From Euprymna scolopes (lineage: Eukaryota): a DNA stretch of 63,675 nucleotides. The stretch is from NCBI GenBank assembly GCA_053919585.1, contig CM132785.1; one strand, given 5' to 3'. The position numbers and the translations under genes are program-made. The notes beneath the pieces are model-generated. The model made no database searches. It saw only the letters and a program-made list of their open reading frames with translations, and was not told the origin of the DNA. Shown here piece after piece: positions 27,331 through 30,002 of this stretch. The stretch's first letter is position 1. Every line of letters begins with the position of its first letter.

Positions 27331-27881
27331 TCGATGTAAACGCTTGTTTTACAACAAATAATAGTGGCATGGTCACAATATACCAGTAACACATTTTTAA
27401 AACTTATTAATTAATCCATCATGACATGCTTATGGTGAGACCTTACTCACCCGTATAGAAGTATTTCTGCCACAATTAGAGGAGTACGCGAATAAATTCC
27501 GTATAAAAAGATTTAGGAAGCCGTAATTCTTTAAAATATACTAGAATGAGAGTTGGGTGCATGTACATCGACTAAGTTTTTGATTTTAGACAGTGGAACA
27601 TCGAAGGTGATCTAATGAGAACTGAGGTGTCAACGTGATTATGCTTTATTATGCAAATGAGCAAGTTTTGACAAGAGCAGTATTTAACGTGTAAATAGTG
27701 ATGACAATCATCTTTTTTGTAGCTGGAATGTTTAGGTATTGGTGAATAACAGCACACGGCTAGAATGTTTAAAATATTCTTTATCAAGTAATTGTGGGTA
27801 GATTGGTTGCATACTACGTTCCAAAACTGCCGACTGTCAACACGACGGTTCTAGGCTCAATCCTTGGCTTGGGAGAGAGGC

Positions 27882-27940
27882 TAGTCTAGCTGCACTGATG
27901 TGTTGTGATACAACGAAACAGGACTGTATGTCGATGACTA
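27882..27940 (+). ncRNA. Type I hammerhead ribozyme (copy 1, with core A9->U substitution)
   Basis: TAGTC-TAG-CTGCA | CTGATGt | GTTG-TGATA-CAAC | GAAA | CA-GGAC-TG | TA | TGTCG-AT-GACTA. Stems I, II and III all form, with a GUA triplet at 27926-27928. Confidence 0.8.
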
Positions 27941-28204
27941 CAAATATATTTTAAGCCCCCCTTCTTTGGGTAGAGCACTGTCGTAAATAATCTCACCCGC
28001 TACTTAATTGGCTGAAAAATGCGAAGCTCGTTGTTTGTTTGTTTACAAACAGGCGATTTGAGCACTATAAAAGTGGTGGCGGGTGTCTATTTACATAGAC
28101 ATTCTGACGAGTTATTTACGGGCGTCGCTTACATGGTCGAGTGGGAGAACTGCCGACTGTCAACACGACGGTTCTAGGTTCAATCCTTGGCTTGGGAGAG
28201 ATGC

Positions 28205-28235
28205 TAGTCTAGCGGCACTGATGAGTTGTGATACA
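28205..28235 (+). ncRNA. 5' half of hammerhead (copy 2, intact CUGAUGA, truncated by (TA)n)
   Basis: TAGTCTAGCGGCA CTGATGA GTTG TGATA CA followed by a TA microsatellite. Confidence 0.7.
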
Positions 28236-30002
28236 TATATATATATATATATGACGATTGTGAAGAACATACTACGTAGTATTTTGCACATTTGGACTTA
28301 TGCGCCAACAGCTTTTACTGGTTAGAATAATACTATCACTTGATTGCGCTCGTCCAATCACGTTCTACCAGACCCACGCTTTTAATTCCATCGACTAGTA
28401 TTCTCTTGGGCGATAATGGAATGTAGTCGTTTGCATTCGAAGAGAATTTACCCTCAACATGTTCGAAAGAACGATACTAATCAGATGTTCATACAGAGAA
28501 TATTTCTTTTATGACAGTAATTAACATAAAACTTGCCGGAGTCAAGATGTCATGACTTCTCTTTAATAGGATTTTAATGGAGCTTTGCTGACTTGAGAGA
28601 AGGGGGTTAAGTGATTTAATGAAGCTAATTCGAGAAAGTTCCTCTCCACCGAAGCGAGAATCCTTATCGTTTATTGTGTGATAAAATAAAAGCAAACTAC
28701 CCCCCAATTGGCAAGATCAGAATCATTTGCATAATGTTCGCGTTTACCTATTTTTTTTAAATAGAACATTAGACATTCACGCAGCATAAATAGCTTAGTC
28801 GTCGTTTATTGACTGATTAGATCTGATTCTCAGCCGAGCAACAGCCGAGGAAGCTCAAAATCACTACACGATAACGATTTGAAAATAAGCAATCCTCAAC
28901 ATATTAGAAGCTTAATACGTCCTAAAATAAAGTACTCCTGCCACATCTGAAGAGAGTTGTTTGGAGCGGTCTCTCCAAACTTGACAGGGTACAAAACCGG
29001 ATTACTTTTTCTCTTTACGAATCAAGCAAGATTCTGAATTTCAAGTTCAGCATAATCCCTTAAGCGAAACATTTTAGACCTTTTTTTTAAGCGATAGCAT
29101 GATATTGAATAAAATTAAGAATTATAGACATATGGTTTGATTACATAATATCGGAAGTTTTATCTTCGTAAGGAGTGTAGTGCTATACTCTTTGATACAT
29201 TGAATTTTACCCGTCCTTGAATAGGTGTTCTAGTACGGTTATATACGAGTACTCAGACGTAACAAACAGCAATCGACAATGAATTTGTCTATCCAAGCAT
29301 CTAAGTCAAACTAAAAATGTCCAACCTTATTCAATCATTTTGAGTAAATGCATTACATACTAATGTTAGCTCATTTTTAGAACGATTTTATTTGAATCGA
29401 TATGTTATTCAAATACCATGATATTGGCTTTGAATAAACTCAATCCGCAATCGTTTAAAAATTCTGAATGCTTAACCCCACACCAATCTTCTCTCAGCTA
29501 AATATAAAAAGACTCCATTCCATCTGATTCACCATATTGCTAATACCCCATCAGTTTTCGAAATGATGTGGAAAGTATTTACAAAAGATAACGGTTAATA
29601 AAGAAATAATATTCTTGAAAATGGAGAAAATACGTAAAATCAGTTCTGATTACGCCAACGTTTCTGTCGCATGGCCATGGAAAAAGGTTTCATTTTGAGC
29701 GTGTGAAATTGAAACTGACACGAGCTGCGTAAATGTTTTATTTATATTTGGAGCTAACAAATTGCGAAATATTCTGGCGTCAATTTTATTACAACAAAAA
29801 TCTTTCGACCTTATATGCAAATAATTTAATTTTTTAACGCAAGTTATTTGCTGTCTCAGTTAATAGAAAGTCCGTTTTAATTATCTGAAGAAAAAGTTGT
29901 CTCATTGACGCATGCGCGTTCTTCGCGTAGGAAAAAAATCTTTCCAATACATACCCTTCGCTCCATTATACATAGCAATCTCTCTCATTATATATATATA
30001 TA

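What the first reader, a model, noticed from the sequence alone, without database searches (positions are those of the whole stretch)
27820..28267. tRNA-headed, hammerhead-containing 323-bp tandem unit: candidate non-LTR retrozyme (circular-RNA element)
Seen: an ~88-bp block repeats with a 323-bp period. It has a tRNA-like head (A box TGGTCGAGTGG, CTGTCAA loop with an Asp-like GTC, B box GGTTCAATCC) followed within ~20 nt by a type I hammerhead. Copy 1 has all three stems, GAAA and a GUA site but reads CUGAUGU. Copy 2 has an intact CUGAUGA and the G that restores a stem I pair (CGGCA/UGUCG) but is cut by (TA)n. The two copies therefore complement each other to give a complete canonical ribozyme with a bulged stem I. 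Known: metazoan non-LTR retrozymes are tandem units of a few hundred bp with type I hammerheads that yield circular RNAs, and the schistosome Sm-alpha repeat is a tRNA-related SINE with a hammerhead. Inference: this is a decayed member of such a family in a probable cephalopod. Active siblings would be Pol III-transcribed and self-cleave to ~323-nt monomers. It lies antisense to Fat. I cannot tell whether the family has already been described.
Basis: partly seen in the sequence, partly recalled or inferred. Interest (0 to 1): 0.88.

Follow-up and report, generated by a model that had tools for sequence, protein, structure and literature searches.

The report
Dead copy of tRNA-hammerhead retrozyme
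This is one broken copy of a very abundant small mobile element of this mollusc-like genome that carries a tRNA-type promoter and a self-cutting hammerhead RNA motif. It belongs to a kind already known from schistosomes, mussels and amphibians, so it is a useful example rather than a new system.

Summary
Window 27825-28252 (+) has 1.27 units of a 323-bp repeat. Unit 1 is cut at its 5' end inside the tRNA-like part, and its hammerhead carries two point changes (stem I G>T at 27891, core A9>T at 27901). Unit 2 has both promoter-like boxes, but its hammerhead stops at GATACA, followed by (TA)n.

The family is large. The 48-nt ribozyme core occurs 16,241 times in this 5.9-Gb genome at two or fewer mismatches, against 0 in the control. 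Half of the sampled ribozymes are fully intact. A diverged sister family keeps the fold through two compensatory pair changes.

All 58 sampled copies reach the same family 3' end 21 nt after the cleavage site, or stop short of it by a small terminal deletion; (AT)n follows in most. Their 5' ends are scattered, they hold up to 3.6 units, and 25 of 58 also have (TA)n directly 5'. This fits copying from a multimeric or circular RNA by a Penelope-like reverse transcriptase. The genome holds thousands of such elements, which also end in (TA)n.

Not shown: Pol III transcription, self-cleavage, RNA circles, or which element mobilises the family. Rfam and tRNA finders do not recognise either motif. 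Poly(A) RNA-seq shows no read ends at the cleavage site.

Verdict: a new member of a known kind (non-LTR retrozyme, Sm-alpha-like). The scan had already noted this kind elsewhere in this genome.

The parts
27810..27819 (+). Possible left target-site duplication, CATACTACGT
   Evidence: The same 10-mer recurs at 28268-28277. This is borderline: the longest match in shuffled flanks was 9. Target-site duplications are not general in the family.
27825..27881 (+). Unit 1: 5'-truncated tRNA-like part. No A box; B box mutated to GGCTCAATCC (27854-27863).
   Evidence: Unit position 1 is window 27825.
27882..27940 (+). Hammerhead 1, type I topology, complete in length but with two changes: stem I G>T at 27891 and core A9>T at 27901. 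The GUA cleavage site lies between 27928 and 27929.
   Evidence: row L001:1283-1341. RNA reads from sibling copies carry G at 27891 and A at 27901 (table 3).
27949..27952 (+). The only run of four or more T in the unit. It is a possible Pol III terminator and sits exactly where the family's copies end (unit position 125).
   Evidence: one T4 per unit, kept in 31 of 31 sampled internal units..
27953..28126 (+). Spacer of the unit. No ORF of 110 aa or more overlaps it, and no RNA family was recognised.
28127..28204 (+). Unit 2: tRNA-like head with A box at 28134-28144 and B box at 28177-28186.
   Evidence: Boxes in the same order and at similar spacing occur in sister family B. Not called a tRNA.
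28205..28235 (+). Hammerhead 2. Only the 5' half is present (stem I 5' strand, CUGAUGA, helix II up to GATACA). The last 28 nt of the family 3' end are missing.
   Evidence: The same end at unit position 88 is seen in L030.
28236..28252 (+). (TA)n tail, or remnant of the target microsatellite
   Evidence: (AT)n follows the element in most sampled copies.
28253..28267 (+). 15 nt (GACGATTGTGAAGAA) between the (TA)n and the possible right duplication. Origin unknown.
   Evidence: It may relate to the 'tail' extensions described for Penelope-like insertions (PMC8557442, PMC11167929). Not tested.
28268..28277 (+). Possible right target-site duplication, CATACTACGT

Best explanation
Window 27825-28252 is a dead, 5'-truncated 1.27-unit insertion of an abundant non-autonomous retroelement.

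Each 323-bp unit holds, in order:
- a degenerate tRNA-derived segment that keeps A- and B-box-like motifs at about tRNA spacing;
- a type I hammerhead with a 5+5-bp helix I carrying an internal loop, a 5-bp helix II, and a short helix III that can pair with a second copy;
- a 21-nt stretch ending in AUAUAU;
- one T4 run;
- a 170-nt spacer.

Proposed mechanism (inferred, not shown):
1. Units are transcribed, possibly by Pol III from the internal boxes with read-through of the T4.
2. Two neighbouring ribozymes can cut out a 323-nt monomer, which a tRNA ligase could circularise.
3. A reverse transcriptase of a resident Penelope-like element nicks AT-rich or (TA)n DNA.
4. It starts cDNA synthesis at a fixed internal site of the RNA, at the AUAUAU 21 nt after the cleavage site.
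5. It copies an uncut multimer or a circle for a variable distance. This gives copies of n + 0.39 units with one fixed 3' end and scattered 5' ends.

The window copy cannot cleave. Ribozyme 1 has lost core A9 and one stem I pair. Ribozyme 2 lacks its 3' half.
For: Abundance:
- 16,241 matches of the 48-nt ribozyme core.
- 16,908 matches of unit positions 1-30.
- 13,881 matches of the B-box stretch.
- All at two or fewer mismatches, with 0 matches in the controls.

Insertion architecture:
- 53 of the 58 sampled elements end at unit position 124-126; five stop earlier (positions 88, 88, 101 and 122, and L024 with a TA-replaced end). Their 5' ends range from position 1 to 265, and they hold up to 3.6 units.
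- Genome-wide there are 6,787 terminal junctions and 2,220 internal junctions.
- 25 of 58 have (TA)n directly on the 5' side as well.

Ribozyme:
- 75 of 94 sampled ribozymes have an intact core, and 47 of 94 also keep all 18 pairs.
- Family B differs by G-C>C-G in helix I and U-A>C-G in helix II. The remaining differences are two at the outer end of helix I, which is then less well paired in B, and two in the loops.
- Helix III of family B is a perfect 10-nt palindrome, and its predicted dimer is the double hammerhead. This is the architecture described for metazoan type I hammerheads in PMC4209133.

Promoter-like boxes: sister family B has A- and B-box-like motifs in the same order and at similar spacing, although its box sequences differ and the sequence between them has diverged further. 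About 90 of 100 unselected copies that have unit positions 1-17 also have the A box upstream.

Penelope link:
- 15,396 GIY-YIG candidate places, many with open frames of about 806 aa, and a 3' UTR that also ends in (TA)n.
- The literature reports partial tandems, 5' truncation and a (TA)n preference for Penelope-like elements (PMC8557442).
- It also reports AT-rich cleavage and internal initiation of reverse transcription downstream of the hammerhead (PMC11167929).
- A 2026 preprint derives vertebrate non-LTR retrozymes from Penelope pLTRs (10.64898/2026.07.22.740005).
Against: - No Rfam hammerhead model reaches its gathering score. Hammerhead_3 scores 14.6-20.3 bits in a different register, and RAGATH-1-hammerhead scores 11.2 bits in the type I register. 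RF00163 did not surface in the scans over this element (a lower hit would be hidden by the clan rule), and in the whole-genome scan, which scored 74 of about 900,000 candidates, its hits came from other families, as their ~410-bp spacing shows.
- The minimum-energy fold of a single ribozyme is not the hammerhead fold and is no better than shuffles (z = -0.65).
- The covariation comes from one sister lineage, so it counts as two events.
- No nucleotide similarity was found between the unit and the dominant Penelope-like element within 1.5 kb of its endonuclease domain.
- Poly(A) RNA-seq shows low coverage on both strands. Most reads run on into unlike sequence, none pile up at 27928/27929, and the flanks of this locus are silent.
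- The head is not recognised as a tRNA.
- The T4 inside each unit would hinder long Pol III transcripts.
Confidence: 0.75

Rival explanations
1. It is an ordinary tRNA-derived SINE mobilised by a LINE. The hammerhead is a passenger, and the multi-unit copies arose from SINE dimerisation or template switching.
For: - A and B boxes lie at about tRNA spacing, and a T4 sits exactly at the copies' 3' boundary.
- Pattern counts suggest that most copies hold only the tRNA-like, hammerhead and tail module: 14-17 thousand copies against 2,220 internal junctions.
- The tail is a simple repeat.
Against: - Copies run on in register through the spacer into one to three further units at a period of about 318-324 bp. 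Dimerisation does not predict this.
- 5' ends are not concentrated at the tRNA start in the sampled copies, although the sampling was biased towards long copies.
- (TA)n on both sides, occasional inverted neighbours and a fixed internal 3' end are habits of Penelope-like elements (PMC8557442, PMC11167929).
- No LINE partner was looked for.
Confidence: 0.12
2. The insertion pattern is right, but the ribozyme plays no part in mobility. The template is an uncut linear read-through multimer, and no 323-nt circle exists.
For: - For the Anolis Penelope-like element, ribozyme mutants inserted as well as wild type in vitro, and no RNA-seq reads ended at the cleavage site (PMC11167929).
- Here too, no read ends occur at 27928/27929, and only 7 reads cross a unit junction.
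Against: - The ribozyme core and its pairing are kept between diverged families A and B, which argues for selection on the master copies.
- Among the first 100 listed exact matches (two contigs) I saw at most two adjacent hammerheads, so I saw no long array that could serve as a source. A circle would regenerate multimers.
- Metazoan retrozymes of this size do form circles in mussel, coral and axolotl (PMC7229834).
- Poly(A) libraries are a poor test for circles.
Confidence: 0.35
3. It is a local DNA-level tandem duplication or a small satellite, not a retroelement.
For: Two adjacent copies with a 323-bp period.
Against: Thousands of dispersed copies on all large contigs share one 3' end and have variable 5' ends.
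Confidence: 0.02

Closest known systems
Metazoan non-LTR retrozymes (Cervera & de la Pena 2020, PMC7229834)
   Same: - Short tandem units in the reported 170-400 nt size range, each with a type I hammerhead.
- No LTR, primer-binding site or polypurine tract; no ORF of 110 aa or more overlaps the element.
- Dispersed in many copies, AT-rich, with irregular target-site duplications.
   Different: - A tRNA-like A/B-box segment sits directly upstream of the ribozyme. The paper does not mention one.
- A strict common 3' end in (TA)n.
- Circles are not shown here.
Schistosome Sm-alpha / Sj-alpha SINE-like elements (Ferbeyre 1998 and Laha 2000, as cited in PMC2770079)
   Same: A tRNA-derived head combined with a type I hammerhead in an element of a few hundred nt (from memory, about 335 nt; not checked here), present in more than 10,000 copies.
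   Different: - Different phylum.
- The Sm-alpha head is still called tRNA-Gln by tRNAscan-SE (PMC2770079), whereas this head is not recognised as a tRNA.
- No sequence comparison with Sm-alpha was made here.
Hammerheads in the pseudo-LTRs of Penelope-like elements, and their protein-less derivatives (PMC4209133, PMC8557442, PMC11167929, preprint 10.64898/2026.07.22.740005)
   Same: - Partial tandems and heavy 5' truncation.
- AT-rich or (TA)n targets.
- A 3' end set by an internal start site a short way downstream of the hammerhead.
- A helix III suited to dimer formation.
   Different: - No RT/EN ORF.
- No detected sequence similarity to the dominant resident Penelope-like element.
- The hammerhead is the 'canonical metazoan' type, with a long helix I and an internal loop, not the minimal type.
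Amphibian satellite 2 and other tandem hammerhead repeats
   Same: Tandem units of roughly this size, with a hammerhead that probably acts as a dimer (PMC4209133, PMC7229834; from memory the newt unit is about 330 bp, not checked here).
   Different: Here the copies are short and dispersed (mostly one or two ribozymes), not long arrays.

Membership tests
Hammerhead ribozyme, type I | Conserved core: C3 U4 G5 A6 N7 G8 A9, G12 A13 A14, the A15.1-U16.1 pair, and a cleavable H17 | tested here: met
   The family majority sequence has CUGAUGA, GAAA and GUA. The core is intact in 75 of 94 sampled copies. It is NOT met in the window: copy 1 has U at position 9 (27901), and copy 2 lacks GAAA and the cleavage site.
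Hammerhead ribozyme, type I | Three helices around the core, with helix I open and helices II and III closed by loops | tested here: met
   18 pairs, 93.7% of cells paired against 18-51% when the partners are slid by one to three columns. Helix III has only 3 bp plus GGAC.
Hammerhead ribozyme, type I | Compensatory changes that keep the helices | tested here: met
   Pair 10-51 changes G-C>C-G and pair 22-32 changes U-A>C-G in family B. Both come from one sister lineage, so this is modest evidence.
Hammerhead ribozyme, type I | A match to the curated covariance model at its gathering score | tested here: not met
   No gathering-level hit. The best scores were Hammerhead_3 at 14.6-20.3 bits (gathering 48.5) and RAGATH-1-hammerhead at 11.2 bits. 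RF00163 scores 42-57 bits on other families of this genome.
Hammerhead ribozyme, type I | Self-cleavage at the predicted site | not testable with these tools
   Poly(A) RNA-seq showed no pile-up of read ends at 27928/27929. This is a weak test.
Non-LTR retrozyme | Head-to-tail units of a few hundred bp, each with a hammerhead, without an ORF or LTR | tested here: met
   323-bp units, 0.6 to 3.6 per insertion. No ORF of 110 aa or more overlaps the element.
Non-LTR retrozyme | Unit-length linear and circular RNAs in vivo | tested here: inconclusive
   Only poly(A) libraries could be laid. Family reads are present on both strands, 7 reads cross a unit junction, and there are no cleavage ends. Junction reads cannot distinguish circles from genomic tandems.
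tRNA-derived SINE | Internal Pol III A and B boxes at tRNA spacing | tested here: met
   TGGTCGAGTGG at 28134-28144 and GGTTCAATCC at 28177-28186, 43 nt start to start. Boxes in the same order and at similar spacing are found in family B and in about 90 of 100 unselected copies.
tRNA-derived SINE | A head recognisable as a tRNA cloverleaf | tested here: not met
   ARAGORN finds nothing at default or -ps settings, and gives inconsistent calls at an 80% threshold. The Rfam tRNA model finds nothing at E up to 10.
tRNA-derived SINE | A 3' tail shared with a partner LINE | not tested
   No LINE 3' ends were compared.
Non-autonomous derivative of a Penelope-like element | Partial tandems, 5' truncation and AT-rich or (TA)n insertion sites | tested here: met
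   (25 of 58 with (TA)n directly 5'). The habits themselves are described in PMC8557442 and PMC11167929.
Non-autonomous derivative of a Penelope-like element | Sequence shared with the pseudo-LTR or 3' end of a resident autonomous element | tested here: not met
   blastn of the A and B units against 30 loci of the dominant element gave no hit at E up to 0.01. Only +/-1.5 kb around the endonuclease domain of one dominant family was available.

The most novel reading that the evidence does not exclude
The copies of n + 0.39 units, with a strictly fixed 3' end at the unit's only AUAUAU, are the genomic footprint of rolling-circle reverse transcription of a 323-nt circular RNA. That circle would be made by Pol III from its own internal tRNA-type promoter, cut out by a dimeric hammerhead, and primed from nicked (TA)n microsatellites by a telomerase-related Penelope reverse transcriptase. 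On this reading the element is a self-promoting SINE-retrozyme hybrid that regenerates multimers from monomer circles.
Probability: 0.25. Interest if true: 0.6.

Novelty: new member of a known kind. Interest (0 to 1): 0.33.

Why it matters
The window copy itself is inert. The family, however, is large, fairly young (about 94% pairwise identity) and unusually regular. It has one fixed 3' end 21 nt past the ribozyme cleavage site, in-register multimers, and (TA)n targets.

That regularity makes it a convenient natural data set for an open question about retrozymes and Penelope-like elements: is the template a circle or an uncut multimer, and where does reverse transcription start?

It would also extend the Sm-alpha-type pairing of a tRNA-type promoter with a hammerhead to this genome. 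By its coded run labels this is a mollusc and probably a cephalopod, though I did not identify the species. The library searches turned up no published description of such an element in cephalopods.

Tried and rejected
- Tandem Repeats Finder finds no 323-bp array, because there are only 1.27 units.
- Rfam at gathering threshold finds nothing in the window or in 20 sibling loci. The one tRNA hit, at L032:52-124, is unrelated.
- The Rfam E-value scans align the core in a type III register with poor outer pairing. I rejected that register, because its helix I would be a 6-nt hairpin and its helix III is mismatched.
- ARAGORN finds no tRNA.
- Single-molecule folding does not favour the hammerhead fold.
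- A systematic search for target-site duplications did no better than shuffled flanks, apart from borderline cases such as the window's CATACTACGT.
- Units within one element are only slightly more alike than units of different elements (95.8% against 94.2%). This does not separate circle templates from array templates.
- The dominant Penelope-like element shows no nucleotide similarity to the unit.
- Its 3' UTR has no canonical CUGAUGA...GAAA motif. By eye it holds only a hammerhead-like stretch with an extra U in the core.
- Read laying gave no cleavage ends and no proof of circles.
- An apparent 3.7-fold drop in copy number just upstream of unit position 1 (against 64) turned out to be an artefact. 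My A-box pattern carried the CCATGG variant of a CpG site that also occurs as CCGTGG and CTGTGG. The count for the spacer pattern is likewise an undercount, because the majority reads TTCCGACG.
- I could not test whether most copies start at the tRNA-like 5' end.
- tblastn of the cadherin exon against window 1-52000 found no further cadherin exon.
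Full report
1. WHAT IS IN THE WINDOW

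The stretch 27825-28258 holds two copies of a 111-nt block, 86% alike, with start-to-start spacing of 323. The rest of this section is read from the sequence itself.

- Unit 1 begins at 27825, inside a tRNA-like segment and downstream of where the A box would be. Its B box reads GGCTCAATCC (27854-27863).
- Hammerhead 1 spans 27882-27940:
  - distal helix I, UAGUC with GACUA;
  - an internal loop;
  - proximal helix I, CUGCA with UGUCG;
  - core CUGAUGU;
  - helix II, GUUGU-GAU-ACAAC;
  - GAAA;
  - helix III, ACA-GGAC-UGU;
  - cleavage after GUA, between 27928 and 27929.
- Against the family majority this ribozyme has two changes: G>T at 27891, which breaks a helix I pair, and A>T at 27901, which is core position 9.
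- The unit's only run of four T follows at 27949-27952, then a spacer of about 170 nt.
- Unit 2 has A-box-like TGGTCGAGTGG (28134-28144) and B-box-like GGTTCAATCC (28177-28186). They lie 43 nt apart start to start, close to the 44 nt of a tRNA gene.
- Hammerhead 2 (28205-28235) has CUGAUGA and the helix I G, but stops at GATACA and runs into (TA)n (28236-28252).

Tandem Repeats Finder reports only the (AT)n, because there are just 1.27 units.

2. NOT CHANCE, AND NOT LOCAL

The window comes from a 5.9-Gb assembly.

- A 133-nt probe across the unit junction found copies at 96-100% identity on many contigs.
- A 540-nt probe of 2.4 units gave 3,775 first-look candidates.
- Whole-genome pattern counts at two or fewer mismatches, all with 0 matches in the reversed-pattern control:

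| Pattern | Matches |
|---|---|
| 48-nt ribozyme core | 16,241 |
| Unit positions 1-30 | 16,908 |
| B-box stretch | 13,881 |
| Terminal junction (ribozyme + ACAAATATAT + ATATAT) | 6,787 |
| Internal junction (ribozyme + ACAAATATATTTTAAG) | 2,220 |

- 31-mers of the tRNA-like plus ribozyme module also occur in DNA runs filed under at least three other organism labels. This is weak evidence, since few words were sampled.

3. ANATOMY OF THE FAMILY

I aligned the unit to 58 distinct sampled elements.

- 53 of the 58 end at unit position 124-126, that is ...GAUGACUACAAAUAUAU, 21 nt after the cleavage site; (AT)n follows in most.
- Five stop earlier. The window copy and L030 both end at position 88, a 28-nt loss between two TACA repeats. 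L014 ends at position 101, a 14-nt loss between two GACT repeats. L023 ends at position 122, and L024 has a TA-replaced end.
- The 5' ends are scattered from position 1 to 265 of whichever unit is 5'-most.
- Elements hold from about 0.6 to 3.6 units, always in register.
- Internal units keep the T4 and spacer (31 of 31).
- 25 of 58 have at least four TA repeats directly at their 5' edge as well.
- Target-site duplications are not general. The window's CATACTACGT (27810-27819 and 28268-28277) is borderline.
- My two samples were selected for long copies. The junction counts (2,220 internal against 6,787 terminal) and the tally (5 tandem pairs among 100 hits) say that most insertions carry one ribozyme.

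4. IS THE RIBOZYME REAL?

For:
- 24 of 101 sampled instances are identical to the 59-nt majority sequence, and most others differ by one to three scattered substitutions.
- 75 of 94 family-A instances keep the whole core, and 47 of 94 also keep all 18 pairs.
- A sister family B was found by chance next to several elements. It has the same architecture with a diverged body. Its ribozyme differs by G-C>C-G in helix I and U-A>C-G in helix II. Its other differences are two at the outer end of helix I, which is then less well paired, and two in the loops.
- On the alignment, 93.7% of cells pair, against 18-51% when the partners are slid by one to three columns.
- Helix III plus its loop is ACAGGACUGU in family A and the perfect palindrome ACAGUACUGU in family B.
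- The predicted minimum-energy dimer of family B is the classic double hammerhead with a 10-bp intermolecular helix III. The A segment forms a duplex of -10.3 kcal/mol.
- PMC4209133 describes 'canonical' metazoan type I hammerheads in just this way: helices I and II in contact, and a short helix III with a small palindromic loop that works as a dimer in tandem repeats.

Against:
- No Rfam model reaches its gathering score.
- E-value scans give Hammerhead_3 at 14.6-20.3 bits, in a register I reject, and RAGATH-1-hammerhead at 11.2 bits in the type I register.
- RF00163 scores 42-57 bits on other families of this genome. It did not surface in the scans over this element, where the clan rule would hide a lower-scoring hit.
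- A single ribozyme does not fold better than shuffled sequence.
- Cleavage is untested.

5. THE tRNA-LIKE HEAD

- Only the two box motifs and their spacing survive.
- ARAGORN and the Rfam tRNA model find nothing. At an 80% ARAGORN threshold the calls disagree on the anticodon. The 'Asp-like GTC' therefore has no support.
- Family B has box-like motifs in the same order and at similar spacing: TAGCGTAATGG, and GGTTTCAATCC or GGTTTCGAACC. The box sequences differ from A's, and the stretch between them has diverged further.
- In an unselected list of 100 copies that have unit positions 1-17, about 90 carry the A box upstream. The site just 5' of it varies as CCGTGG, CCATGG or CTGTGG, as expected of a decaying CpG.
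- That fits, but does not prove, a Pol III promoter in the master copies.
- The single T4 lies about 150 nt downstream of the predicted start, exactly at the copies' 3' boundary. Yet the copies do not end in a T run, and many continue upstream through the spacer. Simple start-to-terminator Pol III transcripts therefore cannot be the only template.

6. WHO MOVES IT?

From this genome:
- It holds 15,396 first-look GIY-YIG places, many with open frames of about 806 aa.
- In the six loci I read, the endonuclease domain is C-terminal, and a 3' UTR of about 600 nt ends in (TA)n. This is a young Penelope-like element with the same target or tail.

From the literature:
- PMC8557442 describes heavy 5' truncation, partial tandems, inverted neighbours, optional tails and a (TA)n preference for such elements.
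- PMC11167929 shows in vitro that a Penelope-like protein cleaves AT-rich DNA. It starts reverse transcription at a fixed internal RNA site downstream of the hammerhead, without homology to the target. It uses uncut multimeric RNA, and ribozyme mutants still insert.
- A 2026 preprint (10.64898/2026.07.22.740005) derives vertebrate non-LTR retrozymes from Penelope pseudo-LTRs.

The family's footprint matches all of this. Still, I found no nucleotide similarity between the unit and the dominant element, so the partner is inferred, not identified.

7. RNA

I laid three poly(A) RNA-seq runs (raw reads) and one set of RNA-seq contigs on window 27600-28450.

- Reads at 90-99% identity cover the element on both strands.
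- Coverage is highest over the ribozyme, which other families share.
- 79-89% of the raw reads run on into unlike sequence.
- The unique flanks of this locus have zero depth.
- Seven reads 'go back 322', as expected from tandem copies elsewhere in the genome.
- No molecule ends pile up at 27928/27929.

So the family is present in RNA, probably mostly as part of longer transcripts. This locus is silent, and neither cleavage nor circles are shown. Poly(A) libraries are a poor test for either.

8. CIRCLE OR MULTIMER?

- A start at AUAUAU, 21 nt 3' of the cleavage site, means the template must be continuous across that site. It is therefore either uncut or re-ligated, that is, circular.
- Units within an element are 95.8% alike, against 94.2% between elements. 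This fits units that were identical at birth but does not decide the matter.
- Among the first 100 listed exact matches (two contigs) I saw no run of more than two ribozymes.
- I leave this question open.

9. COMPARISON AND VERDICT

- What it works like: a non-LTR retrozyme (PMC7229834) with the Sm-alpha-type addition of a tRNA-derived promoter (PMC2770079), mobilised in the manner of Penelope-like elements.
- Membership: the structural criteria are met. Recognition by the curated models, circles and cleavage are not met or could not be tested.
- Earlier notes of this scan on other pieces of the same genome reached the same reading. I treated them as leads only.
- The finding is a new member of a known kind.
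- The window copy is dead.
- The FAT4-like cadherin exon at 52097-57427 on the minus strand makes 'in an intron, antisense' plausible. I did not verify it.

Noticed in passing
G000:C8:10432194-10435515 and G000:C3:89840417-89842627 (not fetched): Rfam-grade type I hammerheads (RF00163, 48-53 bits) sit in regular arrays with a period of about 410 bp. One array has at least 9 units. The other has two blocks in opposite orientation. This is a separate, classic tandem retrozyme family. L011:2213 and L011:2621 hold hammerhead-like motifs (CUGAUGA...GAAA) 408 bp apart.
   Followed up: no
L009:1315-1390 (+): A different, well-formed type I hammerhead lies directly at the 5' edge of a family-A insertion. 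It reads CUUGC-CUGAUGA-GAUC/GAUC-GAAA, has a 5-bp helix III, and cleaves at GUC followed by GCAAG.
   Followed up: partly
3' sides of L012, L057, L008, L041 and L013, just after the (AT)n: Hammerhead elements of other families lie tail to tail, in inverted orientation, sharing the same (TA)n tract. The genome list also shows head-to-head inverted pairs of family A, for example C1:150389892(-)/150390039(+) and C1:166716632(-)/166716724(+). Inverted neighbours are a known habit of Penelope-like elements.
   Followed up: partly
L067, L068, L074, L075, L080, L088 (the six loci read), about 340 nt downstream of the GIY-YIG match: In these loci the dominant Penelope-like element (frames of about 806 aa) has a 3' UTR of about 600 nt with internal poly(A) runs, which ends in (TA)n. 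Near its end is a hammerhead-like stretch (CUUGAAGA, then GCCCG-loop-CGGGC, then GAAAC) with an extra U in the core. It is not a canonical hammerhead.
   Followed up: partly
window 28230-28236, and L030 and L014: The window's unit 2 and L030 share the same 28-nt loss between two TACA repeats. L014 has a 14-nt loss between two GACT repeats. These short direct-repeat deletions at the 3' end could be recurrent template slips or a deleted sub-lineage.
   Followed up: no
window 27600-27657: Another repeat, just upstream of the element, is well covered in all RNA runs, while 27658-27802 is silent. Its loose ends point to several genomic copies.
   Followed up: no
window 52097-57427 (-): A single 1,776-aa open exon has 15 cadherin domains and a FAT4-type N-terminal domain. 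It is the start of a FAT4-like protocadherin gene. No further cadherin exon was found at lower coordinates by self-similarity.
   Followed up: partly
genome-wide list: The site just 5' of the A box varies among copies as CCGTGG, CCATGG or CTGTGG, and the spacer site varies as TTCCGACG or TTCTGACG. This is the pattern expected from CpG decay, which hints that these repeats are methylated in the germ line.
   Followed up: no
loose ends at window 27880: Many RNA reads share the ribozyme from 27880 onward but carry a different upstream sequence (…ACTTGATTCCTGGCTTGGGATGGGT). This points to at least one further family with the same ribozyme and a different tRNA-like 3' half. The 16,241 core count may therefore pool several families.
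   Followed up: no
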